DNA from: Wallemia ichthyophaga EXF-994
Lineage: Eukaryota > Fungi > Basidiomycota
NCBI RefSeq assembly: GCF_000400465.1
Contig: NW_008806280.1
Location: 240,001-272,000, forward strand
Length of the DNA: 32,000 nucleotides
Reading direction: 5' to 3'
In this document: one piece after another, positions 14,201 through 32,000 of the stretch
How positions within the stretch are numbered: position 1 is the stretch's first letter
How the letters are laid out: each line of letters opens with the position of its first letter
Notes under the pieces: generated by a model
Told to the model about the DNA's origin: nothing
Databases searched by the model: none
Seen by the model: the letters and a program-made list of their open reading frames with translations, nothing else
Program-made: the position numbers and the translations under genes

Positions 14201-14307
14201 TAGAGCAACAGGAAGATCCATTCGACATGAACGGATTTCTGCAGGATCAAAATAATGAAGGCAGATTAACATTTGTATTCAAGAAAGTGTCTGGAAGTGT
14301 TGTATAA
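11299..14307 (+). CDS. RDH54: Snf2-family DNA translocase, Rdh54/RAD54B-like
   Basis: Likely ATG 11299 (MKRSRDSAF). N-terminal [18 protein letters not shown] motif, [31 protein letters not shown]|[59 protein letters not shown]. Introns near 12422-12466, 12586-12629, 12846-12886, 13257-13302. Confidence 0.93.
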
Positions 14308-14337
14308 TAGTACAAATTGCATTACAATAATAATTGC

Positions 14338-15339
14338 TTAGGTGGCATCTACAATTATTAGTGGGAGGAAGGGTTAGAAAAACGACTTACATCGGTTCCA
14401 AGTGCCCTGGGTCATCCACTCAGAGTCTGTCCGTCTGCCTGACTTTGGAATATCCTTAGGACCAACTTAGAAAATGTCAGTGAAAATGTATGGTGCGACA
14501 GTCGAATCTCACAGATAGACTTGACGGCGTCGCTTTGGTTTGCATTCTTAGACGTGTTGGACAGCGCATCCGATACTGCCTTTCTAGCGCCTTTTACAAC
14601 ATCAGAGACAGGTGGATCATCGATATTGTCAGCCTTCTTGGCCTTAGGTGTATGTTCAGGCTGATCGGCGGCAGCCTTGCGCTTCTTGCTCTTCTTGCTG
14701 TCAGCCTGCTTCAACCTTGTGGCGTAGAGTTGCTCTTTCATGGCTTCTTCTTCTTCGGGGGGAGGATTAAGCGTGATAAGCTCATCGACATGGTACTCAA
14801 TGCCAGATTCAGGGCACTGACCCGTCTTTGAGCCCTTGTTCATCGACTTCAAACCGCTATCAGAGGCAACAATGCCAGTTTTGGGGAGGTAGACGAATCT
14901 TTGCTTTCCATTCATTTCCTTGAGCGTGATTGGACAAATGAAAGGGGCGTTACTTAGCATAGAATCGCTGTCACGACTGAGGACTTGGTTGAATGAAGGA
15001 TTTGAAGTAAGTTTGAGTTGTTGGACATCTTTTAGAGAGCGTATATGACCACAGATCTTCTGTCCATCGCCGTAGACTGATTTATCGAGGAGAAACTCGA
15101 CAATGGCTTCCTTATTGTAAAGCTTGCCAAGTTGACAGGAAACGACTGGCTGTTTAAGGAGTTTCTTAGACAGAGCACAATAAAACCAGGCTGCTATCCT
15201 AGATATCTCATCGTTCTTCACTTCCGGTTTCTTCTTAGTCTTGACCAATTCTGATCGATAGACAAATGAGCCTCCATCGGCACCCTATCGAGGGCAATTA
15301 AAATTGAGTACAATCAATACTAAAATCCTAGCGTACCAT
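14338..15339 (-). CDS. RTF2: Replication termination factor 2 (Rtf2 family)
   Basis: ATG-only exon 15339-15337, intron 15336-15285, then GADGGSFVYRSELVK, LGKLYNKEAIVEFLLDK, HIRSLKDV and FICPITLKEMNG. Two 3' introns restore ...EWMTQGTWNRYAT*. Confidence 0.93.
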
Positions 15340-15404
15340 TTTTATATTTCTTTATTTGTTGATGGTGGCTACTGTGAAAGGAAACCCCTTTATCACGGCC
15401 AGCC
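15340..15404. promoter_or_regulatory. Inferred bidirectional promoter/5'UTR region, RTF2-CWC15 (65 nt between ATGs)
   Basis: Positional inference from divergent ATGs; AT-rich tract TTTATATTTCTTTATTT. No TSS data. Confidence 0.5.
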
Positions 15405-16421
15405 ATGTCAACCGCGCACAGGTGATTATAAAGAAAAGCACTGAGCCGAGCAACTCTTACATTCCACCGCGCAGACCAACATGGGACCCAGCAGTCGGAC
15501 GAGCAGACACCAAAGCGTACTCGAAGCAGTACTCTGCCAGGGATGCACCAGCGCAGACGAAACTCAAGTTCCGGTGGGTGTGCGAGGTGTATATTACAGC
15601 GTAGGGCATTGTAGTTTACACCACTCTAGTAAGCCCGGTCAGGGAGGTATCGGCGACCAAGATAAGCGCAGAGACTTGCGCCTCGAATTGAACAAGGCAG
15701 AGGAGGAAGCTAATGAAAAGAAACGTAAAGCGCAAGGTTTGTCGTTGGAAGATATTGGCCAGGGTACGGATGACAGCCAGCAGAAAATACCGAAACTTAT
15801 AGACAATCCCGGTGAGGGAGACGCGCATGCTGAGCCATCGACTAGAACACACGAGTCGCAGGCAAGTGAAGACAAGCCTCAGACTTTAGATAAGGATGAA
15901 GAAGCTGATGACGACGAGAGGTGGGTTGCTCACCTTAGCGTTCTATACCGCCTAACATAGCCAAGTGATGACGACTCAGAGGATGATGAGGCTGAGTTGC
16001 TGCGGGAGCTCGACAAAATCAAGCGCGAAAGAGCTGAAGAAAAAGCCAGAAAGGTGAGAAAGTGTTGCTGTTTGTGGTCATCAACTTTCTAACAATTACA
16101 CCACCTAGGACGAGGAGCAAAACAGCGCTAAAGCTGCATCTAGAGAAGAGGAAGTGGCTAGCGGAAATCCTCTACTTAACCTACAGAACGCGTTGGGCGC
16201 TTCTCCATCTTCTACACAGGATACAGGGTTTACTGTGAAACGCAGATGGGATGACGATCTTATCTTCAAGAATCAGGCACTGAATACTTCCGACAAACCA
16301 AAGAAGGAATTCGTTAATGACTTATTGAGGACAGACTGTGAGTATCGCGTGTTTAGTATCCTAACAAAGCTAAAAATATATCCTAGTCCATCGCAAATTC
16401 ATGTACAGATTTATTAAGTGA
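15405..16421 (+). CDS. CWC15: Pre-mRNA splicing factor Cwc15/Cwf15
   Basis: Spliced N-terminus MSTAHRPTWDPAVG, ARDAPAQTKLKFR, EAELLRELDKIKRERAEEKAR, SGNPLLNL, FTVKRRWDDDLIFKNQA, EFVNDLLRTDFHRKFMYRFIK*. First intron 15422-15474. Confidence 0.96.
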
Positions 16422-16639
16422 TTTACATACATTCATAATTAATCTATGTTTGTCGGACACTTGTCAAGCTTGAAGCCAACTGTGGTGGATAAATCAAGCC
16501 AGAGAAATCAAGTTCCTGTTTGGTATACGAGCCAAGTAGAAGAAAAACATGTTGAGCATAGCTTAAAGCTGACATGAATCCATCAAACGCTTGAGCTCGA
16601 CATTTTTGCACATACTCAAAAAAGTAATATAAATATCAT

Positions 16640-18073
16640 TCATTCAAAATCTTCAACTAAAGGGTGATTAGAATTGCTAGATAGTTGAGGGACTACTTAC
16701 AACCACACATAAATGCCTTGTGAATACTAGTATCATCCAGGTCAGCGTACAAACTTAGAAATGGACACAGTCTCACCTCATAACCTTGGCGATAAAGGCC
16801 TCAAGATGGAAAATCTGCTTAGAGCCTTTCCTCATTCGATGCTCCTGAGGTGGATAAGATTAAGTCGTGTTTGTTAAATTCTACTCACATAAAATGCTGC
16901 CCAATAGATAAGGTCTGCACGAATGGAATCGTCGACCATTGTAAGAATGACGTCAAGAAGTGTCTGAAGTAGTTGTTAGGAGATTATCAACTCCGGCAAA
17001 GGAAATTCACTTTGAGAATGAGAGTAGGTGGTATGCAATGTGTGATGAGCTCATAAATTTTTCCTCTTACTTTGAGCAAACCGTCTGGAGAAGGATCGCT
17101 TGTAATTTCCTTAGCGACTTGGATGGTATAAGATTGCCAATCAGGCTTGGCAATTTGAACATTTGAATCAAACGACGGAGATTGCATTCTCATTGCTTCA
17201 AGAACCAGCAAAGCTTTGCGAAGATTACCTGTTGATTCTTTGCCGATCTGTTTGGCGACATCCTCAGGCAGCTGGAACTTCTCTTTTTTAGCTACTTGGG
17301 TCAATACGGTTGACATCTGCAAATTTCATTGAGTATGCTTTGTTACTGAATAAATAACTCACCTGTGGAGGTAAGGGAGCGGGGATTCTAACCAACAAGC
17401 ATCGAGATCGAATTGGAGCTATAATCTTGCTCGTTGTTTGAGCACAGAGAATGATACGAAGGTTAGACATGTACTTCTCCATAGTTCTTCTCAAAGCAGC
17501 TTGAGCATCTCTAGAAAGCTGATCAGCTTCGTTAATGATAACGACTAGGCAATCTGTGAGCTAAAACTAGATTTTTTTAGGTAACCAGCTAACCTTTGAA
17601 TCTTTGTTTCGCATTAGCGTCAACTTGCTGTGTTTGGGCAATTTCTTTGAGGATATCCTGTATAATCAGTCTATCATACTGACCAACGTCGGAAGGTGTA
17701 ATTTCAATGTGATAGTTGCTTTGGACGATGTTCACGTCGAGCTTTCTGTTTGAAGGCGTGAGGAAGACGCGCTGATCGATTTTGAGCTTCTCAACACCTG
17801 GACCAAACAGCTCTCTTAAAGTGGCCATAATGCGTGTCTTTCTACCTGCGCCGGTGGGTCCATAGAAAAGCGTGTGGGGAAAATCGCCGGAGCCAGCCAG
17901 GGATCTGATTCTATTTGTAATATCATGATGATAGTCGAGTTCATCAAGCGACTTTGGCCTATACTGAGCAGAATGAGATAAACCAGGCTAATAAACAAGA
18001 ACTATACTTTATCTACGTATAGAGACTGTAAATATTATTAATTTTATATTTTATATTCCATTTTACTTACCAT
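16640..18073 (-). CDS. RFC5: Replication factor C subunit 5 (yeast nomenclature; human RFC3 orthologue)
   Basis: ATG-only exon 18073-18071, 18-nt exon 18025-18008 (SLYVDK), then YRPKSLDELDYH, DFPHTLFYGPTGAGRKTR, SNYHIEITPSDVG, LRRTMEKY, APIRSRC, GNLRKALL, EHRMRKGSKQIFHLEAFIAKVM and ending GFEDFE*. Confidence 0.96.
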
Positions 18074-18115
18074 TGAGGAGATGACCGTTGCTGTTTACGC
18101 GCTTACGCCCAAGAT
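18074..18115. promoter_or_regulatory. Inferred bidirectional promoter/5'UTR region, RFC5-RasGAP (42 nt between ATGs)
   Basis: Positional inference; contains TTTACGCGCTTACGC. Confidence 0.45.
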
Positions 18116-21100
18116 ATGGCTCATGCACTGGATGAGTTTTCGTATAAGCAATTCATACCTGAGTACGAAATTGGGAATTTAAAGCTCAAAGTGAACCACA
18201 AGTCCAATAGACCGCTTATTCCGATGGTACGTGCGTTTCTCCTGTCCTCCGCTGCTTACCGGTGTGCAGATGTCTAAACTCCGGAGATCTTCTGCGAAAT
18301 CGGGAGCAATGGGAGTGGGATGGAAGCAGATATCTCTAAAGCTCGATTCCATTGGTGGTCTATTTATTCTCGCTGAGGTGAGTGTCAATAGCTCATGGTT
18401 GAGCCTTTAAACTTAAATTCAAAAGGAGGGAACTCCGATTCACTATATTGGCCTTAGTAGCCTGAAAATGACTGATATACGACCTGTCGATTATTCCGTA
18501 TTCACAGTTCCCAACTTAATCGTCATACACACTCATTCTCTCTCTCCAACGCTCCTGATTGGGCAGAATTCTTCCAATCACTCTAACTCTAGCAACTCTA
18601 CATTCGGCCTTCTCAATAACCTCAGGCCCATATCGCCCAAATCCACTCAGCGATCGAGCCCCTCTCCAAACCATCCTCCAAGCCCAAATCCAGACGATCC
18701 ACTTTTTATCGCCTTCCCCACTCGACGGCATATGATAGCTTGGTTGACTCTATTGCGATCATGCACCAAAGCTGACGTTTATCATGCCGGTAAAGACCCT
18801 CACAAAGGTTACTTTCGAATGTCAAGACAAATGTCTCTCTCAATTGTGGAGCTGCGATCCCCGCAGAAAGATGTTCAATCTAACCTTAATGATTATGTCG
18901 AGGACAGCCCGAGTGTTAATGGTAACTCATCCAAAATTAACTCTCTCAATTCGCTGTCTTCATCAAGCTCAGCTGGGCTTACTCCGCCATTACAGCGAAG
19001 AACATCTACCCAATTCACTGAACCTTACAACGATACCTACGAGTGGCACTGTGAGATTTGGGATCCCACAGGACTAGCTTTTAGATCCTCTGCCAAGGTC
19101 GCTTACCATCCATTTTGGAAAGAAGATTGTCTTCTGGTTGATCTACCGAATCTCAACTCTATAACGGTCAAGATATTCAGATCAGTTTCATCATATGCTT
19201 TATCAAAAGGACATTTCACATTGTTTGGTACAGTATTCATACCTCTAAAGGCATATCCAAGATTATCAGAGGTAGACAAATGGTTCAACGTGATTGGCAT
19301 AAACGAAAACACTCTCGAAACTTCTGTCAGGGGAGAATTGAGACTGAAATTGAGGGTTGATGAGGATGTAATCCTGCCCAAAAGCCGTTATGATGAATTG
19401 TTTAGCGTGAGTATAGGTGATTTGTGATTAGTATTATCTCACACCGTCAATTTAGATTATGCAAGGTCAACATAGAGTGAGAGTCATACATGACATCTCT
19501 TCAATATACCCATCTTTGGTGAGTGTATGTGTATATCAATCATCTAGACCAACTGAAACCTTTGCTAGGAACAACTTTCTGATACACTAATCAAAATATA
19601 CTCAATAGATTGCAATTTAATGGTATCTGTAATGAATGATCTTGCTTACAAAGAAATATGGTCATCAAGAGCTGGTAGGTCTGACTCAAAATTCTAATCC
19701 TGGCTAACAACTAGTAGATGAGAATACAATATTTCGGCCAAATACAATATTAACTAAATTAATGGATCGCTATATGAACTTCATGAGTAGACTGACTGGA
19801 TGGTTGGAGGATAGTCTGGGACACCCTATCCGCGAAATGATAGACAAGAAGGTAGAATGTGAATTAGATACAGATAGAAAAGGTGGACCAGCAGACAAAG
19901 ATGAATTGCTTCACTGGGCTGATGTAATTCTCAATAGCATCATAGAATCAAGAGTTGGATGTCCAATTGAGCTTCGAAAGATATTTCATAACATAAGGAA
20001 ACAATGTCATGCAAGATGGAACAAGGCTCAATTAGTAAACTCATTTATCTTTTTAAGACTTTTCGTACCTGCGATTATCAACCCAAATTTATTTGGTTTG
20101 ACCAATGTGTCACCATCACCTGGAGTTTCGCGTACATTAACACTGATTGCGAAAATAATTCAAGCTCTTGCTAATAATAAAGAGGAGATGGGAGATAAGG
20201 AGCACTTTATGGGAGTCGTTTCACCATTTTTACAAGATCATAATAGGAGGTTTGCATTTATTGATTACGTTGCATATGTTGGTAATGAGGATTCAGCTGC
20301 TTCTTACAAGACGAGTGAAGAAATATCAATAAACGAGTTGGCGACTTCTGTTGAGAAAACATCGGATAGGAGATTCAATGATTGCAGTCATGATATATAT
20401 AGGCAGTCTCTACCAAGTTCATACACAGGGATTGATAACTCGAGAGAGTTGGCGTCGTTCACCAACGATCTCAACAAGATATATAACAAAGTGCAGCTAA
20501 ATGAATTGCAAAATAGGGATCATTATTTTAGGAGAAAGTCATTAAATTACGCCACGCTTGAATTGTTTGAAGCAAGTATGGATATACAAGAAGATGCCAG
20601 ACAGATGTGGGAGTCTCGGCAAAGACATAGGAGAAAGGCCAATTCGGCATATGAGTCGTCGAAACCCAACAGAAGCGAATGGTTAAGTGATCAGCAAGAC
20701 TTACGCAGTAGTAGAAAAGTAAGCGTGTCCAGTTCTAGCGCTAGCTTAGAACCGCAAATGAAGCAATCATCGTCGCAGCGCCGTAGAGGATTTACAATCA
20801 CAGGATTGAGTAATGGCAGCAATAATTGGATTCATGATAGTAAACGTAAGAATATTGGCAGTGATAATAAGACAAGTAACAGCAAAAGTAGCGCGACTAA
20901 TAAGAACAATAGTACGGGTAATAATAATACAAGTAATAGTAACACAAGTAATAATAAGAGCAATGGCGCTCATGCTAAGAACAAAGTTGGTAATCGTAAT
21001 CAAAACAGGGACAAGAAGGATTACGTCAATAATGATCCATCGAGATATATGGACCTAGGTAGGGGATTTAATGACTATCAATTCATGCAATACGACAAGG

Positions 21101-21483
21101 AGAAGAGGGAGAAGAAGGGGAAAAAGGAGATGGAGGTGGAGAAGAAGGAGATGGCAAAGAAGGAAGAAAAGGCAAGCCCGCCTAATACACCGGAGTCGAT
21201 GAAGAATTTGAAAATAACACTGGAGAAGTACAGACTTACCCAGGAGGCGGTGGATGATGCACCGTTACCGAAATATCCGTTACCTGTGAGTGACAGTGTG
21301 AGTAGCAATGTGAGCAGCAACGTAAACAGTCACAGCTACGATAACAACGATCGTTCAAAGTCAAGGGCGAGTGTTCGAAACTCAGCGACAAAAGGAGAAG
21401 AGGAGCACAGCAAGGATGACATAAACATTGACAATAAAAAGAAGACAGTCTTCTTCAAATGGACCAAAGGAATAATTGATTAG
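18116..21483 (+). CDS. Ras GTPase-activating protein with C2 domain (Bud2/Cla2-like) and low-complexity C-terminus
   Basis: ATG 18116 plus two upstream introns (GTACGT..GCAG, GTGAGT..AAAG) join in frame to ORF 18468. C2-like segment HPFWKEDC...GELRLKLRV, arginine-finger segment NTIFRPNTILTKLMDRYM and GAP signature SFIFLRLFVPAIINPNLFGL...RTLTLIAKIIQALAN. Confidence 0.88.
20815..21180 (+). repeat. Low-complexity coding tract (Asn/Ser-rich, then Lys/Glu-rich) in the RasGAP tail
   Basis: AAT/AGT/AAC-rich run encoding NKNNSTGNNNTSNSNTSNNKSN, followed by a purine-rich run encoding KEKREKKGKKEMEVEKKEMAKKEEK. Confidence 0.75.
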
Positions 21484-21569
21484 GTATAGAGGATATTGAA
21501 CACTTTTTAATCAGCACAGCTTAATAATAAATTTAAGAATGAAAGTATATTTTGTATTATATTAATGTT

Positions 21570-22144
21570 CTACGCATTTAATTCTTCTCTAGTTGGAATG
21601 CCTGTGGGTGATGATAAGTGATGAGATGTGAGCAGTTTCATTAGTAAGTAGACACACCAAGTTCTTCTCTGAGTGGCTTGAGAGCATCAAGGTATTGCTC
21701 ATATTGGCCTTGATTTTCGACCTTCTCCTTTATGCCTTCCTGTATAGTAAAGAATCAGCCAATCAGGTTGTCGGAAAAGAGAAAATGAAAAAACGGACAA
21801 AGATTCTGACAGCAGTGCTAAAGTCGTTAACACGTCTAGAAGCTCTGATTGCAGATTCGCATATTTCAGGAGCAGGTACTAAATCGTAAGCGAAACAGTT
21901 GTTCAATCCTCTTTGCAATTCGAAAAGGTCTTCAACTTGATCGAAGAATGCGGTGTATCTCTTTGTGAAGTCTTCAAAGCTTTCCTCTTCATGTCCAGCG
22001 CTATATTGACGAACTAGGTGTAGAGTCAGCGCTTTGTGGTAAGTGTGCACACGAATAAACACCTTGGGTGATTGGAATTGAAGGCGTTAAGCTAACTCTC
22101 GATAAAGCTCTCGCATTTACTGCTGTTCTAAGTACACCGAACAT
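21570..22144 (-). CDS. COX6: Cytochrome c oxidase subunit Va (yeast Cox6) precursor
   Basis: Presequence MFGVLRTAVNARALSR, then EESFEDFTKRYTAFFDQVEDLFELQRGLNNCFAYDLVPAPEICESAIRASRRVNDFSTAVRIF|EGIKEKVENQGQY...LREELG|IPTREELNA*. Three short introns. Confidence 0.97.
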
Positions 22145-22224
22145 TTTTTTAAACAGTTGGTTGGATACAAGAGAGAGAGGTGGGCGTCTTTCGAACGATT
22201 GAGCGATTGAGTGGTTAGATTAGT
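22145..22224. promoter_or_regulatory. Inferred bidirectional promoter/5'UTR region, COX6-Alba gene (80 nt between ATGs)
   Basis: Positional inference; contains a GA dinucleotide run and repeated GATTGAG. Confidence 0.45.
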
Positions 22225-22728
22225 ATGATTGAATGCGTTGTAACTAAAGCTGGTAAAATGAGTAACTACATTCAAGTCATTTTGGGTGGTTTGGAGGTGT
22301 GTTCGTTGGTGTATATTCACACTGACTCACACCCGTACAAAGAAGAAGGAAGTTGTAAAAGTAACAGCTTTGAAAGAAGGTGTAAACCTCGATACATCTA
22401 GTGCACTCGCAGCGAAAGTCATCAGCGTGGTCGAAGTCGCCAAGAGGCAGTCATCGGACGTTTATCAGTATACACGCCTAGTTGAGCATCAAGAGGTTAG
22501 GTTGAACTTGTCAGCAAGTGATATTATAAATGGGAAGAGGTTGGTTGGTTGATTTGGTGTACTTGTACCACTTCTAACCTCAATACAGCCAGACATCGAT
22601 ACCACCACCGACAATTGAAGTCATTCTAAGCAAGCAAGCGTTAGATATCGATAGTGATTATGTGTTAGTGGCTTACTTAGCGTGAAACACTTGACATTAA
22701 CACCACACACAGACTTCAAAAAGACTAA
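22225..22728 (+). CDS. Small Alba-domain protein (Rpp25/Pop6/Rpp20-like), 119 aa, 4 exons
   Basis: Exons 22225-22296, 22343-22539, 22589-22663 and 22713-22728 (360 nt, in frame) give MIECVVTKAGKMSNYIQVILGGLEKKEVVKVTALKEG...AAKVISVVEVAKRQ...YQYTRL...PTIEVILSKQALD...LQKD*. This fits the Alba pattern GKxxNYI, KAxSVAEIxKR and IEIxLS. Introns of 46-49 nt carry CTGAC/CTAAC/TTAAC branch sites. Family call is by motif recognition only. Confidence 0.8.
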
Positions 22729-22731
22729 GAT

Positions 22732-23882
22732 CTATAACAGCAAGTTATTTACAGCTTTCTCATCATTCAAGTTTTCATCAAAATCGTAAGGTAGAAGCGA
22801 TGCAACTGTTGTCGTGTCAGCATGTTTAGCAGATATCACTTAACACAACACTTACAAGTCAAGTACGACGTGTGACCTCTTGTATCCATGAAAGGACGAC
22901 TGAGCAGTGTGCTTCTGTCATCGATATTACTACTGGTTTCGTCTAGTTTGCGTTTGCTCGTTTGTTCGCTTTCAACACTGATATTGACGGGCTGGTTGAG
23001 AGATTCATCGCCAGCCTCACCGCCAGCCTCATTAAGTTTCAATTCAAGCTTTTTCTGGGCTGCAGCAATCTGTTGCTGCCTTCTAAACTCCTTTTTCTTT
23101 AGTATGGCTTTCAACTTATTCGTGACGTCGTTTATATTTGGAAGATGAGTGTAAGAGGTGTCGTAATTTCTAGAGAGAACTTCAAACATGGTAACGTTGG
23201 TAAAGCCATTCGAGTTGAGAGTGGTTGTAGTTTTAAGTACCTGTTCAATACACGGACTGAAGCAGCAAATTCTGCTAATTTTGTCATTACGGAGGGATTT
23301 CTTTGCATGCGGGATAGCTAGCCAAGGCATGGGTAGGTCTAGAAAGATGGAGTCTATAGAGTTGTTAAGGTGTGAAGGGAAGCCGTCTTTGCAGCTATCT
23401 CTGTGATAGACGTTGATGATATCAGATAAACCGTGTTGATTGAACTCTGATTGAGCCTTCTGGCATCTAGATTGATGATATTCGAAGGAGTGGAGCTGGC
23501 CACGGGTACCAATAGATCTAGCAACTGAATGACTGAAACTACCTGAACCAGTACCTGATTCGATGACTTTTGAACCCGGTTTAATGTTTAAAGTGAGAAG
23601 AATGAAGCTAATATCCGTGTTGTATAGGATCTGAGTTCTATGAGGGAGAGCTAGAGTCCATAACTCCGGAGAAGGCTTGAGTAAGTGAATAAAGCCTCTG
23701 TTGTTATTTGAACTAAGTTTATCACCAAAGCATCTACCAATGATATCTTTATGCTTAAAATTACCAAATTTATTTTGAAATATTTTATCCTCCTCAACTC
23801 GAATAAGTGATAATTGATCTCTAGTTAACCAAATGATAACCAAATCATTCTCTTTAATTACCGATTCCTTATTATTTATCAT
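22732..23882 (-). CDS. TRM61: tRNA (adenine-58-N1)-methyltransferase catalytic subunit Trm61/Gcd14
   Basis: PSPELWTLALPHRTQILY, VIESGTGSGSFSHS, LHSFEYHQSR, FLDLPMPW and CCFSPCIEQV. Intron 22855-22806 restores GHTSYLTFASLLP; TAG ends at 22732. Confidence 0.97.
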
Positions 23883-24221
23883 TGAATTGCTCTGGTGTTA
23901 ATGTTTTTTGTGTAAATGCGTGCAATTTGCTTATCTCCTCTTTAAGTATATCGTTGACTGGTGAGGGGTTATTAGTTTGGTGATCTAGATAAAATTTTCC
24001 GAACCAACCCAATCGATGTCTCTTTAGAGTTATTAGACCATTAAATATTTTACTAACGATTACGACTTCAAAGCTCTGTCCACAACCACCGCTAACATCT
24101 TTAACGGACTATGTGATTTGACTTAGACTGCTCATCCAATCAAATCACTCCAAATACCCACAACATGCTCAACCTCTGGTACTTTGATTTCTATTTGCTG
24201 TTTAAATTTTTCCTGATCCAT
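23872..24221 (-). CDS. BOL2: BolA-family protein, cytosolic Bol2/Fra2 (BOLA2) type, 81 aa, 3 exons
   Basis: Exons 24221-24162, 24108-24009 and 23957-23872 (246 nt); introns GTGGGT..ATAG (53 nt) and GTTGGT..CTAAT..CCAG (51 nt). Product MDQEKFKQQIEIKVPEVEHVSVKDVSGGCGQSFEVVIVSKIFNGLITLKRHRLVNDILKEEISKLHAFTQKTLTPEQFNDK* has the D-x-SGGCG, RHR-x-VN and HA signatures of BolA2. Confidence 0.95.
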
Positions 24222-24290
24222 TTCCAATTCCAGTGGCTATTCAAGCGAGCTGTTGCGTTCGAATATTAGAATTATAAATTACAAATTAAA
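24222..24290. promoter_or_regulatory. Inferred bidirectional promoter/5'UTR region, BOL2-QCR2 (69 nt between ATGs)
   Basis: Positional inference; AT-rich ATTATAAATTACAAATTAAA directly before the QCR2 ATG. Confidence 0.5.
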
Positions 24291-25608
24291 ATGCAAAGGT
24301 CTTTAGTACTCAACTCTACCAACAACTTCAAAACAGCGTTCAAGCCCTCCCTCGCTAGCTCCATTAACCTCGTTTTTAACGCTGGAACAAGATTCGAAGA
24401 CACTCAAGGTGTGGCTAACGTTTTAAAGAACTTTGCTTTTAGGGTGAGTTGATTGGTTTATACTAAGGTACACCCTCTAATCCCCCAAAGGACACACAAA
24501 ACCGCTCCAGCCTACGTCAAGTTAGAGAAGCTGAAGCTGCTGGTGGTGTTCTCTACTCTTCCCTTACAAGAGACAATCTCACTCTCTCTGCTGACTTCAT
24601 CCCCGGCCATGAAGACCTTTTCCTCTCTCTTCTCGCTGATGTCGTTAAGTCGACCAAGTTCGCCCCTCATGAATACAAAGAGGTCGTTAAGCCTGCTATC
24701 GATTCTGAAGTAAACGCTGCTCAGCGTAATCCTCTCATTCAAGCCATCGACGCTGCTCACACTATCGCCTTCAGAAGAGGTTTGGGTAACTCTCTCTTCT
24801 CCGCATCCGAGCAACCCGTAGACCTCCAAGACGTCAAAAAGTTCGCCAGTAAAGTCTACTCTGCCGACAACGTCGCCTTTTTAACTACCGGGCAATCTGA
24901 CTTTTCATCCAACTTATCATCCTACTTCAACGACTTAACCGCAACTGGTCAAGTTAGCTCACAACCATCCAAATACTTTGGTGGTGAACAGCGCTATAGC
25001 CTCTCGCACGATGGTCACTCCCACCCATCTGCATTCATCGCCTGGGGCTCAACCTCTCCATCACCTGCTCACAACGTTTTAGCTGAATTGTTGGGTGGTC
25101 AATCTAACATCAAATGGTCGAGAGGTCTTTCACCTTTGTCTGCAATCGAAGAGGGCAATGTTAACGCTCTCAACTTTGATTACTCTGATGCTAACCTCTT
25201 TGGTTTCACTGTCGAATCATCAACCGACCTCAACGTCAAGACTGCTTCACAGAAAGCTGTTGCAGCTCTCAAGGCAGTTGCTCAAAATGGTGTCGAATCC
25301 GCTCAGTTACAACCTGCTATCGCTAAATCTAAATTCAACTACACCCTCTACGCTGACTCAGCTCAAGGATGGAAGCAACTTAACGGCGAAGGTCTCATCA
25401 ACAACAACCTCAAATCACTCGATCAAGTTCTCGGTGAATTCGATGGCGTATCTACTACATCCATTCAACAAGTCAGTCCAGCTTATAAAGTTCCTGACTG
25501 CTTTTCTAATTTTTCCTTTAGGCAGCTGCTCATCTTCTCGACAACAAGGTCACTCTTGTCACTGTCGGTGGTAGAGACGCTCCATACGCCGATGAATTGC
25601 ATCTCTAA
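24291..25608 (+). CDS. QCR2: Cytochrome bc1 complex core subunit 2 precursor (non-catalytic M16 family)
   Basis: AGTRFE..GVANVLKNFAFR|DTQNRSSLRQVREAEAAGGVLSTSLTRD, AAHTIAFRRGLGNSLF, GGQSNIKWSRG and FDYSDANLFG. No HXXEH motif. Introns 24444-24490 and 25472-25521; ends PYADELHL*. Confidence 0.95.
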
Positions 25609-25671
25609 AATTCATGCTATAATTCATGTAAATACACCCTATAAAAATATTTCAATTATTTTAAATACCAA

Positions 25672-28600
25672 CTACTCGTCAAAGAAGTCATCCTCGATTG
25701 TCCTTTCCAATAACTCCCAATCGATATCTTGTTTGTCAAGAACATTATTATACGTCACACTACTCAACGCCCGGTAAAATGGTGATAAATCTCCCATCTG
25801 ACTTATCTTTCTTACGTTGGTCAGTAATGGTTGTCTTTTTTCACTATTGATTTGTAGCTTGAATGATTTTTCAGACGCTCCCATTAATCCTTCTTGTCCA
25901 AACAATCCCGACAACTTATCAATAATACCGTATTGTTTACCATCGCAGCTGGCATCCACAGTATCTGTAATGAATAGTGACTGATATGCTTGGAAATCTT
26001 CATTTTGCAGTAGCAACAGGGTATCCAATAGCTTGCAAGCGCTTAAGAGTAATGGAAGTAGATCTAGATGTTCAGCAGAAGGCGATGTAGTAAATATGTC
26101 AAATAACCTTAGCAATTCTGTATTTACTATTGGCCAAAATGTTGTTAAGTCGTCGCTTTTAAATCGCACTAGCAACACTCTGAGACAGAGATAGATTTCA
26201 GATTGTGATACTGGTGTAATTGCATTGTTGCGCACTACCTCCACCAGCTTTTCTTTCACTAGTGGTAATTGCGATGTGTAACTTTCCGGATTACCTGCGA
26301 ATATTGCGTAGCTAAGTCTGCGCAAGTTGAGAGCTCTTGACAAAGATTCGTATTCCCTATTAGCAAATATATTTGTAGACGGTGCACTAGACACTTTGCT
26401 GACGAGATCTTTAAACTTATCTTTCTCAGCCGACATGAGCGCGTTGACGAGGTACTTCCATTGATGAGTTTTGGAAGCGTTGAAAAACCTGTTGTCATAG
26501 AAGACATCACTAACCAGTCCCTTCCAAGATTTTGAGCAGTGCGGTAAGCGTGTTAAACCCACCAGCACATCCACACTTGCGCTGTGTGGTTGAATCCCAT
26601 TCGTGCCTTTTGAAGTTGATTTCAGTGCAGGAGCGACCACGCAATATGAAATATTCGCAGCAATGCTTTGTAATTTTTCCGTTGAGGATATTAAATTAGG
26701 TAGGTCCACCAATAGCTCATTCGCCATGTACAGATAGATCTTTGAACTGTCACCGTCTAATTTCTCAGCAAGTGAATTGACAGACACGCTATCGCGATCA
26801 GAGTCTTCATTAGTACCGGTAACATTCGCTACATCCAACCCAGCCAACGCTTTCTTGAGCGCCCATGGACCTGTGTCTGAGCCACCGGTGCTGATGAGGA
26901 TGGAGGAATCAATAAATCGATGCAAGATATCCTGCAACAAATGTCAATAGAGTGCTCTAGTTGAAGCGCTGAGCACTTACCTGGTAATCCATCTTGACTT
27001 TCTTTTCGACGATCTCCGTCGTCTCACCATTGAAAATGCGAAGACCGACTATATGAATGCATCTATCTAGCGTTATTGTAGAGTCCATGAAAAAAAACTA
27101 AACTCACCTTAACGTTGGATAAACGCATAGTTTTCGCTGTGCACTAGTCGTAGATACTATCACATCACGCGCAAATGGCTGTAGAGCAACCCAAGATTGC
27201 AAAGCATCCTTAACACTAAGCTCACCAAGATACACCTCCAAGCTCTCAAACAACATTGACGAGCTAATTGCATCACTTTGCCACAACGAGCGTGGCTTTT
27301 CATCCCCAGCAAAACTTCTCATTCCTATGTTCTTGCATATATAATGAACGAGTATTCGAGAGGGGTCTGAAAATAGCTTGAATATTTTTAGCAAAGTCAC
27401 TTTGTTCAATGTTTCTTGATAATACTCCATAGCAAGGTCCAGCATCTCATAAGGTCTTTTTTCAAACAAATTGTGGATGTACCCTTCACATTGCGTAGTC
27501 AGATAGTCGAAAGTTCCACTTTGTTTATTTTTAAGTGTAAAGTATAAACTCGTGAGAAGCTTGAACGATACTCCCATCAACGACATTGTCTGCTCGACGA
27601 TATTAGGACTACCGTGAATCATCGAAGTGTGTAGATCATCTAGATTGATGACCAAGATGGCATTCAACGATGACAACACTGAAGACAAGTTTTTGTGGTC
27701 GCTGAAGGATACGCTCAGGTTGTTCGTGTGTAACATGTCGCTTAATTTGCTATAGATGATGTTTCCCATATCGAGTTTGTGATCACGAATCAACATTGAG
27801 TACTTATCTAAGATCATACTTGTAAAGTTGATCCAGTATTTTAAAAGTGACTGACAGCCTGCATTTGATATAGCGTTGCGGAGCAGTTTGACTACAGTTT
27901 GACCTAACTCGTTACTGCTGTGTACGTTGTTCAAATCGCAATGCTGCAGTGCACATGTAACAAGCTTGATGGCTCTTGGCTGGACATCGAGATTGACTAG
28001 TTGAACATGATAATTTAGATAGTTGCTAATGACGAAAGCCGCCGTAGTAAATACATCTGAATCTTTCCGACTATAGATGAACATTTCCTCTAGCAACTCC
28101 ATAGTAGCCATCTGTAAATACTCATTACCTGGTTGTATAGAAGAAGCGATACCTTGGTTCGGTTCAGATTGCAATATCCTGACAGCTCGTAAGCAACTAT
28201 TATTACTCCTCACAAAAATCTCACCTGAGACTCAGTTGTAATAAGGATAGTTCACTCTCACTCTCATCCAAGCGACCAAGTTGCTCCCAAAAGGATTGTC
28301 CAATGTGTTTACTGAGCTTGGTAAGCTGTTGCAGACTGTAAATAGCAATCTCCTGGTCCCAATTAAGGAAATACTCGTAGGCACTCGTGTTGAACAGATA
28401 TTGCCTTTCCACGGTTCTTGAAGCTTGTGTGACTTTTGAAATTTTCGCAATTAGTGATCTAGTCACCATACCAGAGTTATCGAAATACTTCTTCAACCAA
28501 AGTGCATTTGTTTGACTATCTTCTGCAGCTGTAGTATCACTCGAGTTGACAGTAAAGAATCTCGATACCGGTATTGTGAGATCGAAGTGTGTTGGACTAA

Positions 28601-30999
28601 ACCTCGATGCTATACTGTAGATGATACCACATTGATGAATGACTTGCAGTCGCGCTGGTTGGTCATTGTCATTATTTAGTCTTTGTGCGAGAATTGAAGT
28701 GATATGTTCTTGAGCCGTTGTATTTTCTATCTCTACAATCAATTTCACGCAACGAAAGTGATAATCAAAATACTGTGGAGCTAAATAGGGAAGCAATGCA
28801 TTGAGGAGTGTTTCATGTGCTTCTCTATCCATCCATTGCAGATATACACTGTCATCTGAAAAACAAGTCTGCCTCAATGTCAGAAGACATTTTATTAGTA
28901 ACTCTGTTGTTTCAAATTGGTTTGATATTGATACTAGCTTGAGCAATGCGGTAAACAACTGCGCAATCATATCCCCAAAAGATTCATTCAGTTGTTTGCG
29001 TGGGTATCGTAGAGTGAGCAATGTGTATAACGTAGAAAAGCTGCTTTTTACCATCATTGAGTCAGCAACATCTTCAGACCAGGACAAATTAATTTCAATA
29101 AGACGTTTCAGTAATGCTTCATAGAATGTGTCAGGGGTCTCGACCTCGGGTATATCGATGCTATCGGTGTATTCTGCATCAGCGACGTAATCCCAACTAG
29201 AGACAACTTTTTGACTGTCTTTAATTATCCAAGGAGTTTCGTTCATTACCTTTTCTGGAATGTGATTAATTAGCATTTGGGCAAGGATAAAAGCACGTTC
29301 GGTCAAGACGGACTTCCTGTTAGCCTGTCGATTAACGGATATAAGTTTGAGTATGTTGAGTAATTGAATCGGAAAATGCAAGCATGTGTGCGCTTCCTCT
29401 TCGAATGATATATTGTCCACAATCATTGTGATGAGCTCGATCGAACGACAAGTGTCATCTTGATTGGTGAAATCTGATTGAAGCTGATGATTCATTGCTT
29501 TCCACAATAAATATATGTCTATTGATTCCAATACCATGCTGGTGATGATCTTAACGTCTGCATTTCTGTCAACATCCTCCTTCAACCGACACTCGAGACA
29601 GCTGATGATTTCTGAGACTATACATTTCGTCAAATTGTGACCAATCTCCCATTTGTCCAATAGAGAAATGAATATTTTGTAAGGTCGACTATCAAAGGAC
29701 TTGGTTGTATCCATATCTGCTAACATCCATGAGCTGATTAGGGGTAAACCAAAAGTATTGAAATAGGAAGATAGCGATTCTTTGTCATCGGATGTACCGA
29801 GTAACCAAGTAAACAGGCGCCTGTTTAATGATATGTCTTTACGCAAGACTACATTGCATGCATTCCTGCACAAATCAACCCTGAAATCTGATCTAGAGAA
29901 TTTCTGAAGCGCAGGTCCACCAGTAGGTAGGCTTGAGATGAGCAAATCAAGTGCTGAGCGCCGCACAAGCATATTATTGTCCATCAAAGAAGCTGATACT
30001 CCGCGAATCAACAAATTAGCGTCAGATGAAAGAAACATGATAATTTCTGTTGCAAGGTTAGATATTATAGAGTCTCAAACGTTTGTCTTACGATCATCAG
30101 TGTCAAGGGGCGGCATTTTGCGCAATAGATAATTTAAAGTTGAAATGCGAGAAGCGGGGGACGTTATTAGTATTAGACAGAGGTTTTGTAGGAAGAAATG
30201 AAGTGCTGTGGTAGAACTGAGGTAATCTAGCATCGATAAAGCCTGGATTGTTTCATCTTGTTAGCTAATAGAAATCGAACTGAAAGAGGAAAGCACACAT
30301 CGTCGAAATGTTCACCGTTCTCCTCTTCAAGGCCAGGTAATAGCGATAACGTCATTGATTTTATGATGGGTCGTAGATGTGAGCGTAGGGGGAAGTAATG
30401 CGATTTGTAAAGTTCAAGAACGAGGGGCTATTATTGGCAATGAGAAGGGTATTTCAGGGAAGAGATGCGCTCACTCGAACAGAAATGGCAGCATATTGAA
30501 AGAAAGGAAATAAGCTGGTAGACCACATTTGTAAATCACGCTTTAAACCGTCTGTCTATATAGCCAATGAGAAGGAGATAGTGGAAGGAAGACAGCTTAC
30601 ACCCATAATAGCAAACAACTTGTCATAAACCTCTAAAGCCTTTTGATGAACACCAGTAGGCAAAGCAGGATTCAAGCATTGAGATAAACGCTTGGATACG
30701 ATAAGCTTGTGAGGAATATCGTTGAACTGTGGATAAGACTGGATAGCTTTGAGCAGCTTGGCGAGAAATGCGATGAAATCAGCCCATTCTTGGACGTCAA
30801 GGAAGGAGTTTAAGCTGCGATCAACAGCTTGAGAGTATTTCTTGTACGTAGGGTTAGAACTGAGGGAGATATCTGCATCCCTGGGAGCTAAACGTTGATC
30901 ATCACCGGAACGAGAACTGGGCAGCCAGCTAGAGAAGGCGGATGAGTTTGTGGGGGTGGTTGGATTGGATAGAGATGGGAATATTTGGTTATCTGACAT
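25672..30999 (-). CDS. DOP1: Dopey/Dop1 endosome-Golgi trafficking protein
   Basis: N-terminal Dopey domain EWADFIAFLAKLLK, KRLSQCLNPALPTGVHQKALEVY, LFPFFQYAAISVR, LVRRSALDLL, VVLRKDISLNRRLFTWLLG. C-terminal SSAPSTNIFANREYESLSRALNLRRLSYAIF and YLCLRVL. Several short introns, not all boundaries resolved. Confidence 0.95.
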
Positions 31000-31049
31000 A
31001 TAAAAAACTCAAATAATTCTCAGAGATGCTCGTCGTCACCAACAACGAT
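31000..31049. promoter_or_regulatory. Inferred bidirectional promoter/5'UTR region, DOP1-ECM16 (50 nt between ATGs)
   Basis: Positional inference; TATAAAAAA at about 30998-31006. Confidence 0.45.
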
Positions 31050-32000
31050 ATGGCCAAAGACAGATCGAATAGATTCAACGCAAAAGGCCGTCAATCTGGT
31101 TTGAATAAATTAAAAGAAGATGAAAAGATTAAGCAGCGTAAAAGAAGTAAAGTTGTGGAGGACCGTGAGAGTACAGATGCGAATACAAACGCCGATTTGA
31201 TTCTTCCAAAGTCCAAGGAGCAGAAAGAACAAGATCAACTAAGAAAACTCGAGCTCAGGAAAGAGGTTTGTGCGTTTGAGAAGCTCGTACCCCTCTCACA
31301 CACAATATCCAGTTGGAATCCCAGCAGGATGGAAAGGTTTCCAGCAAGAAGCGCAAGAGACTTGATGCTTACATTGTGTGTCTCTATACGCGTCATTGGC
31401 CCACGCTTATCATCCTCTCTCAGACTCGTCAACTCAAGAAGGAAGAACGCAAGGAGTTGATTGACAAACTTTCGTGAGTCTTCTGTCAACTACAGCGACG
31501 CGTAATGACTGTTACAGCAAATCACAAACTCCCACTGATGCTTCGTATCTGAAGTCATCCGCTAACCTTGGCTCGAGGCAGCAGCACTCTGCTCAAGATA
31601 AGCTCGATGTCTCAGAGCATATCCAAGTCAAATCTGCACTTAGAAATGCTGGTAGAAGAGTCCAGCATCCTGACACTAATCAAGACTCTGATTCTCTCTC
31701 TGAACACTCGAGTGCCTCGGATGATGATGATGTCAATGTTCCTATCGATAAGCCTCAGCAACCAGCAAGCACGGTATCCGCATCTCAAACGTCTACAAAA
31801 GAGCACATCAGTCCTCCACAGAAACCACCTATAGGAAATGCACTTGGAAGTGCCCTTGGAGCAAGTGGTGTTAAACCAATCGTCAGACCTAGAAAAAAGA
31901 AGGCTAAAACTGTCTCTGTGAGGGTATAATTTTATGCTCTTCCCCGCCGCTTACCAATCAAAGACTTTGACTCGTGGCTGGAAACTGTCAGCAAACTCTG
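31050..32000 (+). CDS. ECM16: DEAH-box RNA helicase Dhr1/Ecm16 (DHX37), N-terminal part only
   Basis: RFNAKGRQS, SKKRKRLDAYI and KEERVKLIDKLS match the Dhr1 N-terminus as I recall it. The helicase core is outside the window, so the call rests on N-terminal motifs. Confidence 0.75.

What the first reader, a model, noticed from the sequence alone, without database searches (positions are those of the whole stretch)
23860..24221. BolA2 CDS overlaps the TRM61 start codon on the same strand: candidate bicistronic or +1-frameshift-coupled BOL2-TRM61 unit
Seen: the spliced BOL2 frame ends TTC AAT GAT AAA TAA TAA and TRM61 begins inside it as A|ATG ATA AAT AAT AAG, an 11-nt operon-like overlap (23882-23872). 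There is no intergenic DNA, BOL2 exon 3 has no GT donor, and TRM61 has no other in-frame Met before its conserved DLVIIWLTRD region. A +1 slip at AAA-U-AA would enter the TRM61 frame (..FNDK-NKESVIK..). Known: several +1 frameshifts use a stop codon in the A site (antizyme, bacterial RF2), AAA-UAA is the Euplotes motif, and polycistronic transcripts have been reported in basidiomycetes. Bol2 is a Grx3/4-partner [2Fe-2S] chaperone; Trm61 makes tRNA m1A58. Inference: TRM61 is made from a bicistronic mRNA by leaky scanning or termination-reinitiation, or as a frameshift fusion, or from a promoter buried in BOL2 exons/introns. The first options could link iron-sulfur status to tRNA modification, which is speculative.
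Basis: partly seen in the sequence, partly recalled or inferred. Interest (0 to 1): 0.8.

Follow-up and report, generated by a model that had tools for sequence, protein, structure and literature searches.

The report
Conserved 11-base BOL2–TRM61 gene overlap
In the very compact genome of the salt-loving fungus Wallemia ichthyophaga, the end of a small iron-sulfur helper gene (BOL2) overlaps the start of a tRNA-methylase gene (TRM61) by 11 bases on the same strand; the overlap is real and kept across the genus, but it looks like genome compaction between two separate genes rather than a frameshift fusion.

Summary
On the minus strand, a three-exon BolA2-type gene (81 aa, 24221-23872) ends 11 nt after the ATG of TRM61/GCD14 (23882-22732, 366 aa). 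The window is Wallemia ichthyophaga. The same 11-nt overlap occurs in five Wallemia lineages, with the stop codon varying (TAA, TAG, TGA). The two genes are not neighbours in three other basidiomycetes. A fully spliced cDNA-type contig from a W. mellicola-like species confirms the BOL2 splice sites and shows the junction is colinear in RNA, with no spliced fusion.

- **+1 frameshift:** not supported. AAA-stop becomes AAG-UGA in one lineage, there is no conserved structure, and the TRM61 ATG is conserved and aligns with Met1 of other orthologues.
- **Leaky scanning:** unlikely. The BOL2 AUG has A-3/G+4 in every lineage, and three lineages have 3-4 AUGs in between.
- **Termination-reinitiation:** not excluded, but there is no TURBS motif.
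- **Most likely:** two genes squeezed together. Local CDS gaps are -2 to 218 nt. TRM61 would be translated from its own AUG on an mRNA that starts inside BOL2, alongside read-through RNAs. No TSS or poly(A) data were available.

BOL2 is missing or wrong in most public Wallemia annotations, and the reference TRM61 model is a BOL2-TRM61 chimera.

The parts
24162..24221 (-). BOL2 exon 1 (ATG at 24221-24219, context GAAATGG)
   Evidence: Translation and splice model. The same exon boundary is seen in the cDNA contig L008 compared with its genome L011.
24109..24161 (-). BOL2 intron 1 (53 nt, GTGGGT...ATAG)
   Evidence: The orthologous intron is removed in cDNA contig L008.
24009..24108 (-). BOL2 exon 2 (holds the DVSGGCGQSF BolA2 core)
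   Evidence: The best PDB match is 5y4b_A, BolA-like protein 2, E=8e-18.
23958..24008 (-). BOL2 intron 2 (51 nt). It is A/T-rich with an AAAATTT motif in all Wallemia genomes read. It is a candidate site for the TRM61 core promoter or TSS region; this is inferred only.
   Evidence: The promoter role was not tested.
23872..23957 (-). BOL2 exon 3, including stop TAA at 23874-23872. It contains no GT and no ATG other than the TRM61 start.
23872..23882 (-). 11-nt same-strand CDS overlap, ATGATAAATAA (TRM61 ATG through BOL2 TAA)
   Evidence: The overlap length is conserved in L001, L002, L003, L008/L011 and L009.
22856..23882 (-). TRM61 (GCD14) exon 1
   Evidence: The protein is identical to W. ichthyophaga TIB34695.1.
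22806..22855 (-). TRM61 intron (50 nt, GTAAGT...ACAG)
   Evidence: The orthologous intron is removed in L008.
22732..22805 (-). TRM61 exon 2 with stop TAG at 22734-22732
23766..23789 (-). Patch of suppressed synonymous change in TRM61 codons 32-39: GATAAAATATTTCAAAATAAATTT, with AATAAA at 23774-23769, starting 98 nt 3' of the last base of the BOL2 stop codon. It is a candidate BOL2 3'-end signal (tentative).
   Evidence: Six of 7 informative codons are identical in 5 lineages, against a 19% background. Gene-wide permutation gives p about 0.03-0.05.
24222..24290 (.). 69-nt divergent spacer between the BOL2 ATG and the QCR2-like (Peptidase_M16) ATG at 24291 (+)

Best explanation
BOL2 (BolA2/Fra2-type) and TRM61 (catalytic subunit of the tRNA m1A58 methyltransferase) are two separate, intact genes under purifying selection. 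They became tandem neighbours in the Wallemia lineage and were squeezed together until the BOL2 stop lay 11 nt inside TRM61.

**Shown:**
- Each protein starts at its own AUG.
- BOL2 is expressed and spliced as modelled.
- RNA is colinear with the genome across the junction.

**Inferred:**
- TRM61 protein is made mainly from a shorter mRNA whose transcription starts inside BOL2, in intron 2 or exon 3. That gives a short leader in which the TRM61 AUG is the first or nearly the first AUG.
- BOL2 mRNA is cleaved and polyadenylated within roughly the first 150 nt of the TRM61 coding sequence.
- Read-through BOL2-TRM61 RNAs probably also exist, as in other fungi, but are not the main template for TRM61.
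- The overlap persists because both ends are pinned by coding constraints and a compact genome has no pressure to re-expand. It is not there to couple the two functions.
For: **Organism and compaction**
- The organism is Wallemia ichthyophaga (99-100% identical TRM61).
- Its genome is 9.6 Mb, 73.6% CDS, with 514 genes per Mb (PMC3849046).
- In the annotation of a near-identical W. ichthyophaga contig (it encodes the identical TRM61), 11 genes around the site have CDS-to-CDS gaps of 50, 63, 46, 113, 86, 42, 218, -2 and 30 nt.
- One divergent pair shares CATG as both start codons. Promoters and 3' ends embedded in neighbouring genes are therefore the local rule.

**Both genes are real and independent**
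- BOL2 keeps three exons, the same intron positions and mostly third-position changes in five lineages.
- TRM61 Met1 is conserved and aligns with Met1 of other basidiomycete orthologues and with the start of the yeast Trm61 structure.

**RNA evidence**
- cDNA-type contig L008 equals genome L011 minus every intron. BOL2 is therefore expressed and spliced as modelled, and the junction is unspliced.

**Adjacency is lineage-specific**
- The genes are not neighbours in Calocera, Rhodotorula or Russula, which argues against an old functional unit.

**Leader and 3'-end hints**
- Four of five lineages have at least 118 nt free of ATG upstream of the TRM61 ATG in genomic DNA.
- The strongest synonymous-site conservation in all of TRM61 is an A/U-rich AAUAAA-containing patch about 100 nt after the BOL2 stop. 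This fits a BOL2 3'-end signal.

**Literature**
- In Agaricomycetes and in yeast, genes found on polycistronic or bicistronic RNAs are also transcribed on their own (PMC4503453; PMC8573964).
Against: - No TSS, cap or poly(A) data exist for this locus in anything I could reach. The nested promoter and the BOL2 poly(A) site are inferences.
- The cDNA contig is continuous from BOL2 into TRM61, which is also what a bicistronic mRNA would give.
- The exact 11-nt overlap length is kept in all five lineages while the flanking codons diverge and an indel occurred just upstream. That could reflect selection on stop-start spacing.
- AATAAA is not a general feature after stop codons here: 1 of 9 neighbouring genes has it within 200 nt. 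The conserved patch reaches only p about 0.03-0.05.
- The W. mellicola-like lineage has a 2-codon uORF ATG 60 nt upstream of the TRM61 ATG.
Confidence: 0.6

Rival explanations
1. Obligate or predominant bicistronic mRNA with termination-reinitiation. Ribosomes translate the 81-82-codon BOL2 ORF and terminate. A fraction of post-termination 40S subunits move back about 8-11 nt to the TRM61 AUG and reinitiate, which ties TRM61 output to BOL2 translation.
For: - RNA is continuous and spliced across both genes.
- The stop lies 11 nt after the AUG in all five lineages although the stop codon itself changes (TAA, TAA, TAG, TGA, TGA).
- ORF1 is short for a protein-coding gene.
- Coupled termination-reinitiation with short overlaps is known in viruses and in some cellular mRNAs (PMC5972666).
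- A strong BOL2 Kozak context suits this model.
Against: - No UGGGA (TURBS motif 1) lies within 120 nt upstream in any lineage.
- There is no stable or conserved structure at the junction (z-scores 0.3, 1.4, 0.1, -1.3, 0.25).
- The short-read contig also merges antisense neighbours, so its continuity does not show one molecule.
- Reinitiation after ORFs longer than about 30 codons is normally inefficient without a tethering element (established knowledge; PMC5972666).
- In other fungi, co-transcribed genes are also transcribed separately (PMC4503453).
Confidence: 0.22
2. Bicistronic mRNA read by leaky scanning, as in green-algal bicistronic loci. Some 40S subunits skip the BOL2 AUG and start at the TRM61 AUG.
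For: - W. mellicola (L001) has no AUG between the two starts in the spliced mRNA.
- Exon 3 is AUG-free in four of five lineages.
- The mechanism is proven in green algae (PMC11291117).
Against: - The BOL2 AUG has A at -3 and G at +4 in all lineages.
- W. ichthyophaga, L003 and W. hederae have 3, 4 and 4 intervening AUGs, about what chance predicts, so AUGs are not depleted.
- The W. ichthyophaga TRM61 AUG itself has T at -3.
Confidence: 0.05
3. Programmed +1 ribosomal frameshift at AAA-UAA, producing a BolA-Trm61 fusion protein (..FNDK-NKESV..).
For: - TRM61 is in the +1 frame relative to BOL2.
- A Lys codon directly precedes the stop in all lineages.
- A stop codon in the A site is a known +1 stimulator (antizyme, RF2, Euplotes; established knowledge, reviewed in PMC5009743).
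Against: - The Lys codon is AAG (AAG-UGA) in the L008/L011 lineage, so the slippery AAA-U is not conserved.
- Sequence 3' of the stop is not conserved and no structure stands out.
- The conserved in-frame ATG, which matches the orthologous Met1, would be unnecessary.
- None of the 120 best-scoring TRM61 homologues listed carries a BolA domain.
- W. ichthyophaga has two stops in tandem.
Confidence: 0.02
4. A spliced BOL2-TRM61 fusion mRNA, as drawn in the reference annotation: EXF-994 model XP_009267706.1, with BOL2 exon 1 and part of exon 2 joined to TRM61 residue 70.
For: The GeneMark-ES model P0244 (334 aa) has this structure.
Against: - It needs a 382-nt intron (24057-23676), against a genome mean of 61 nt.
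- It deletes half of the BolA fold and the N-terminal domain of Trm61.
- The cDNA contig shows the normal splice pattern and a colinear junction.
- Newer NCBI models give the 366-aa protein.
Confidence: 0.01

Closest known systems
Overlapping genes and transcripts in compacted eukaryotic genomes (microsporidia, nucleomorphs; Williams et al. 2005 PNAS, cited from my own knowledge; the title appears in reference lists found)
   Same: Extreme gene density leaves intergenic spacers of a few tens of bases or fewer. Promoters, UTRs and 3' ends lie inside neighbouring genes, and RNAs cover more than one gene.
   Different: Wallemia is a free-living basidiomycete with normal intron density. Here the coding sequences themselves overlap on the same strand, and the overlap is conserved across a genus.
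Polycistronic read-through transcripts of Agaricomycetes (Gordon et al. 2015, PMC4503453) and bicistronic transcripts of budding yeast (Wu and Cox 2021, PMC8573964)
   Same: These are tandem same-strand fungal genes covered by one RNA. The genes are also expected to be transcribed on their own, and how the downstream ORF is translated is unresolved.
   Different: Those screens required non-overlapping ORFs with stop codons in between. Here there is no spacer at all (-11 nt). A single-molecule RNA has not been shown for Wallemia.
Green-algal bicistronic loci translated by leaky scanning (PMC7896298; PMC11291117)
   Same: Two unrelated nuclear ORFs sit on one strand with a very short spacer or overlapping stop and start.
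   Different: The algal ORF1 has a weak start context and lacks internal AUGs. Here the ORF1 context is strong and AUGs are not depleted.
Coupled termination-reinitiation (calicivirus and influenza B TURBS; hypovirus UAAUG; some human mRNAs; PMC5972666, PMC2699510)
   Same: The downstream AUG lies a few nt upstream of the upstream ORF's stop.
   Different: There is no UGGGA/TURBS motif and no conserved structure. The 11-nt overlap is longer than the classic 1-4 nt.
+1 frameshifting with a stop codon in the A site (antizyme, bacterial RF2, Euplotes AAA-UAA)
   Same: The downstream frame is +1, and in W. ichthyophaga the sequence AAA-UAA is present.
   Different: The slippery codon is not conserved (AAG-UGA in one lineage). 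There are no stimulatory elements, and the downstream ORF has its own conserved AUG.

Membership tests
BolA2 / Fra2 (Bol2) family | BolA domain of about 80-90 aa over the whole protein | tested here: met
   Pfam PF01722, E=8.8e-17, residues 9-77.
BolA2 / Fra2 (Bol2) family | Closest to the BolA2 subgroup rather than BolA1 or BolA3, with the conserved GGCG Cys and the C-terminal HAF His motif | tested here: met
   The best PDB matches are BolA-like protein 2 (5y4b_A, E=8e-18) and Arabidopsis BolA2. BolA3 and BolA1 match more weakly. The DVSGGCGQSF and LHAFTQKTLTPEQ motifs are shared with fungal BolA2 and S. pombe SPAC8C9.11.
BolA2 / Fra2 (Bol2) family | Forms a [2Fe-2S] complex with Grx3/4 | not testable with these tools
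   This is a biochemical property.
Trm61 / GCD14 (catalytic subunit of tRNA m1A58 methyltransferase) | GCD14 domain with a SAM-binding GxGxG motif and full-length similarity to solved Trm61 | tested here: met
   PF08704, E=1.5e-92. Yeast 5eqj_B gives E=5e-73 over residues 6-347, and human TRMT61A 5ccb_A gives E=6e-64. The ESGTGSGS motif is present.
Single-molecule bicistronic or polycistronic mRNA | One RNA molecule carries both complete ORFs | tested here: inconclusive
   The spliced contig L008 spans both ORFs. It is a short-read assembly that also merges antisense neighbours.
Leaky-scanning bicistron (green-alga type) | Weak start context on ORF1 | tested here: not met
   GAAATGG (A-3, G+4) in every lineage examined.
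Leaky-scanning bicistron (green-alga type) | No AUG between the ORF1 start and the ORF2 start | tested here: not met
   There are 3, 4, 4, 0 and 1 intervening AUGs in the five lineages.
TURBS-type termination-reinitiation | Stop and restart codons within a few nt of each other | tested here: met
   The AUG begins 11 nt before the end of the stop codon in all lineages.
TURBS-type termination-reinitiation | UGGGA motif 1 complementary to 18S rRNA helix 26, upstream of the restart site, with a supporting stem | tested here: not met
   No TGGGA lies within 120 nt upstream in any lineage. There is no structure signal.
Programmed +1 ribosomal frameshift | Conserved shift-prone P-site codon next to a slow A-site codon | tested here: not met
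   The sequence is AAA-UAA, AAA-UAG or AAA-UGA in four lineages but AAG-UGA in L008/L011.
Programmed +1 ribosomal frameshift | Conserved stimulatory sequence or structure, and a downstream ORF that lacks its own start | tested here: not met
   The 3' flank is not conserved. Fold z-scores are near zero. The downstream ORF has a conserved AUG that matches the orthologous Met1.

The most novel reading that the evidence does not exclude
TRM61 in Wallemia has no promoter of its own. It is translated only from a BOL2-TRM61 bicistronic mRNA. After terminating on the 82-codon BOL2 ORF, 40S subunits step back to an AUG 11 nt upstream without any TURBS-like tether. The genus-wide fixed -11 spacing would then be the functional signature. 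This would be a cellular, operon-like, translationally coupled gene pair in a fungus.
Probability: 0.2. Interest if true: 0.7.

Novelty: new member of a known kind. Interest (0 to 1): 0.38.

Why it matters
**Annotation.**
- The overlap causes gene callers to drop or mangle one of two housekeeping genes.
- BOL2 is absent from most NCBI Wallemia annotations and only partial in the JGI one.
- The reference W. ichthyophaga TRM61 entry (XP_009267706.1, UniProt R9AGT7) is a BOL2-TRM61 chimera. Comparative studies would wrongly score Wallemia as lacking BolA2.

**Biology.**
- A same-strand CDS overlap kept across a fungal genus is a clean natural test case. It asks how a downstream gene is expressed when it has no intergenic DNA at all.
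- The candidates are a nested promoter plus an internal poly(A) site, or translational coupling.
- The question can be settled with a few standard experiments.
- If coupling were shown, this would be a rare cellular example in fungi. If not, it documents how far promoter and terminator embedding can go in a free-living eukaryote.

Tried and rejected
**Transcript evidence**
- I looked for transcript evidence for W. ichthyophaga itself. Neither the exact spliced BOL2 protein nor any Logan RNA-derived TRM61 of this species is in the protein collection. Only genomic ORFs were found.
After it was returned by a homology search (P0253), it proved to sit on that one contig only.
- Two metagenome scans, one with the conserved TRM61 patch and one with a degenerate BOL2 core pattern, found nothing. 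No poly(A)-tailed or 5'-end-defining contigs could be obtained.

**Signals near the junction**
- TURBS motif search was negative.
- Folding of 120 nt around the junction in five lineages gave no signal.
- BOL2 exon 3 shows no synonymous constraint that would mark a promoter or leader.
- AATAAA as a general Wallemia poly(A) signal was rejected: only 1 of 9 neighbouring genes has it within 200 nt of the stop. The conserved patch is therefore only a tentative 3'-end signal.

**Other leads**
- P0121, the best BolA hit, was followed in case it was a Wallemia-like transcript. It is an unrelated 915-nt contig carrying BolA alone.
- Literature searches for Wallemia with polycistronic, overlapping or bicistronic found nothing on this locus.
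Full report
**What is there**

The finding lies on the minus strand. I read 25200-22000 and listed ORFs, then built both gene models.

BOL2 has three exons: 24221-24162, 24108-24009 and 23957-23872. Its introns are 53 and 51 nt. It encodes 81 aa (MDQEKF...TPEQFNDK) and ends at TAA 23874-23872, followed by a second TAA. TRM61 starts at ATG 23882-23880. It runs to 22856, has a 50-nt intron, and ends at TAG 22734-22732, giving 366 aa. The two coding sequences share ATGATAAATAA (23882-23872, 11 nt), and TRM61 is in the +1 frame.

- Pfam gives BolA (E=9e-17) and GCD14 (E=1.5e-92).
- BOL2 is closest to solved BolA2 proteins (5y4b_A, E=8e-18).
- TRM61 aligns over residues 6-347 with yeast Trm61 (5eqj_B, E=5e-73).

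- Exon 3 has no GT.
- The TRM61 frame has a stop six codons upstream of the ATG.
- No other Met precedes the conserved N-terminal domain.
- Met1 aligns with Met1 of seven non-Wallemia basidiomycete orthologues.

**Whose genome**

The TRM61 protein is identical to W. ichthyophaga TIB34695.1 and 99% identical to other strains. The published genome is 9.6 Mb, 73.6% coding, 514 genes per Mb, with 61-nt mean introns, and was annotated with GeneMark-ES (PMC3849046).

I looked at 21 kb of the public annotation of a near-identical W. ichthyophaga contig (it encodes the identical TRM61).
- Eleven genes strictly alternate strands.
- CDS-to-CDS gaps are 50, 63, 46, 113, 86, 42, 218, -2 and 30 nt.
- The -2 case is a divergent CWC15/RTF2 pair whose two start codons share CATG at window 15404-15407.
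- BOL2 itself lies only 69 nt from the divergent QCR2-like gene.

Core promoters and 3' ends embedded in neighbouring genes are therefore normal in this genome.

**Conservation**

I fetched the orthologous loci:
- W. mellicola (L001, and L009 for strain CBS 633.66)
- W. hederae (L002)
- an unnamed Wallemia at 79% protein identity (L003)
- a W. mellicola-like species (L011, L012)

BOL2 is intact in all of them, with the same intron positions and mostly third-position changes. Its stop lies 11 nt after the start of the TRM61 ATG in every one:

| Lineage | Junction sequence | BOL2 stop |
|---|---|---|
| W. ichthyophaga (window) | AATGATAAATAA | TAA |
| L003 | AATGATAAATAA | TAA |
| W. hederae (L002) | AATGCTAAATAG | TAG |
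| W. mellicola (L001) | AATGCTAAATGA | TGA |
| L008/L011 | AATGCTAAGTGA | TGA |

The stop codon identity drifts and two of the five internal bases vary, but the spacing does not. W. ichthyophaga has lost one codon just upstream of the ATG (FNDK versus FKNDK), which puts a T at -3 of its TRM61 start.

Outside Wallemia the two genes are not neighbours. No BolA lies within 5 kb of TRM61 in Calocera viscosa or Rhodotorula toruloides, and no TRM61 lies within 5 kb of BolA in Russula vinacea.

**RNA evidence**

Logan contig L008 (3744 nt, run SRR23314750) is 99-100% identical to genomic L011 except that every intron is precisely absent. That covers two QCR2 introns, both BOL2 introns, the TRM61 intron and those of the downstream gene. 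This shows three things:
- BOL2 is expressed and spliced exactly as modelled.
- RNA crosses the BOL2-TRM61 junction colinearly, with no splice there.
- Transcripts of neighbouring genes on both strands overlap enough for a short-read assembler to merge them.

Because of the third point, the contig cannot tell one bicistronic molecule from overlapping mono-cistronic ones.

**Testing the proposed mechanisms**

*+1 frameshift.*
- The Lys codon before the stop is AAG in L008/L011, so the AAA-U slip site is not conserved.
- Sequence 3' of the stop is unconserved.
- 120-nt folds around the junction have z-scores of 0.3, 1.4, 0.1, -1.3 and 0.25.
- The conserved ATG that matches the orthologous Met1 would be pointless under this model.
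- None of the 120 best-scoring TRM61 homologues listed has a BolA domain.

*Leaky scanning.*
- The BOL2 AUG is in GAAATGG in all lineages.
- The spliced mRNAs carry 3, 4, 4, 0 and 1 AUGs before the TRM61 AUG.
- The algal loci that use this route have the opposite features (PMC11291117).

*Termination-reinitiation.*
- The geometry fits, and the fixed spacing is mildly suggestive.
- However, no UGGGA motif lies upstream, there is no structure, and ORF1 has 81-82 codons.
- It remains possible (PMC5972666).

*Nested transcription unit.*
- It fits the local genome architecture.
- It also fits what long-read work found in other fungi, where co-transcribed genes are also transcribed independently (PMC4503453; PMC8573964).
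- Two weak sequence hints point the same way. First, four of five lineages have at least 118 nt of ATG-free genomic sequence upstream of the TRM61 ATG.
- Second, the most synonymously conserved stretch of the whole TRM61 gene is codons 32-39, GATAAAATATTTCAAAATAAATTT (23789-23766), which carries AATAAA 98 nt after the BOL2 stop. Six of 7 informative codons are identical in five lineages against 19% background. Gene-wide permutation gives p=0.03, or 0.05 when stratified by amino acid.
- I read this patch as a possible BOL2 3'-end signal, with a caveat. AATAAA follows only 1 of 9 neighbouring stops.

**Verdict**

The best explanation is two independent genes pushed into an 11-nt overlap by genome compaction. 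TRM61 would be initiated at its own AUG, most probably on an mRNA that starts inside BOL2 (confidence 0.6). A translationally coupled bicistron is the main rival (about 0.2). Leaky scanning and frameshifting are unlikely, at about 0.05 and 0.02. The proposed link between iron-sulfur status and tRNA methylation has no support.

**Annotation consequences**

- No Wallemia BolA2 of full length is in the 5.8-billion-protein collection apart from the ORF on the cDNA contig.
- The NCBI strain annotations skip BOL2.
- JGI's W. mellicola CBS 633.66 has a partial 61-aa BolA model that does overlap TRM61 by 11 nt. The overlap therefore already exists in one public annotation, without comment.
- The reference W. 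ichthyophaga EXF-994 TRM61 (XP_009267706.1, 334 aa) is a chimera. It joins BOL2 exon 1 and part of exon 2 to TRM61 residue 70 through an implausible 382-nt intron.

**Novelty and interest**

Overlapping genes and transcripts in compact eukaryotic genomes, and polycistronic RNAs in fungi, are known kinds. This is a new, genus-conserved member with an unusual same-strand CDS overlap. I found no paper describing it. It deserves moderate interest as a tidy test case and an annotation fix. It would deserve high interest only if coupling were demonstrated.

Noticed in passing
window 23872-24221 (-); L001, L002, L003, L010: BOL2 is not called in the annotation of the near-identical W. ichthyophaga contig (GCA_004918415.1) or in the W. 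mellicola and W. hederae strain annotations. JGI's W. mellicola CBS 633.66 has only a partial 61-aa model. No full-length Wallemia BolA2 is in the protein collection apart from the ORF on cDNA contig L008.
   Followed up: yes
window 24221-22732 (-); predicted false intron 24057-23676: The reference W. ichthyophaga EXF-994 TRM61 entry (EOR01444.1 / XP_009267706.1 / UniProt R9AGT7, 334 aa) is a chimera. It joins BOL2 exon 1 and part of exon 2 to TRM61 from residue 70 through a 382-nt intron that the cDNA does not support.
   Followed up: yes
window 12732-32000 (L010): Eleven consecutive annotated genes strictly alternate strands (- + - + ...), with CDS-to-CDS gaps of -2 to 218 nt. BOL2 to TRM61 is the only tandem pair in the stretch. 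This may reflect selection against tandem arrangement in a very compact genome.
   Followed up: partly
window 15404-15407: The divergent CWC15-like gene (+, ATG 15405-15407, MSTAHR then an intron) and the RTF2-like gene (-, ATG 15406-15404, MAGRDK) share the tetranucleotide CATG. Their start codons overlap head to head by 2 nt, so each promoter must lie inside the other gene.
   Followed up: partly
window 23766-23789 (-): TRM61 codons 32-39 (DKIFQNKF, GATAAAATATTTCAAAATAAATTT) show the strongest synonymous-site conservation in the gene across five Wallemia lineages. The function is unknown. It may be a BOL2 3'-end signal, but AATAAA is rare after other stops nearby.
   Followed up: partly
window 23958-24008 (-); L001, L002, L003, L011 BOL2 intron 2: BOL2 intron 2 carries an A/T-rich AAAATTT(T)A motif in every Wallemia genome read, about 100-120 nt upstream of the TRM61 ATG. 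It could be a TATA-like element for TRM61 or simply intron composition. This was not tested statistically.
   Followed up: no
L008:1-3744 versus L011: One short-read cDNA contig joins the 3' end of a further neighbour, QCR2 (-), BOL2 (+), TRM61 (+) and the convergent downstream gene (-), all spliced. Only 52 nt separate the divergent ATGs and 29 nt separate the convergent stops. Sense and antisense transcript overlap is therefore pervasive at this locus.
   Followed up: partly
window 23883-23885 (-) compared with L001-L003: W. ichthyophaga has lost one BOL2 codon immediately upstream of the TRM61 ATG (FNDK versus FKNDK, FQNAK and YENAK). This changes the TRM61 -3 base from A to T. It also has two tandem TAA stops.
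   Followed up: partly
window versus L010: The coordinate offset between the window and the GCA_004918415.1 contig differs by 1 between the two ends of the alignment. At least one 1-nt indel therefore separates them, so the window is a very close but not identical assembly or strain.
   Followed up: no
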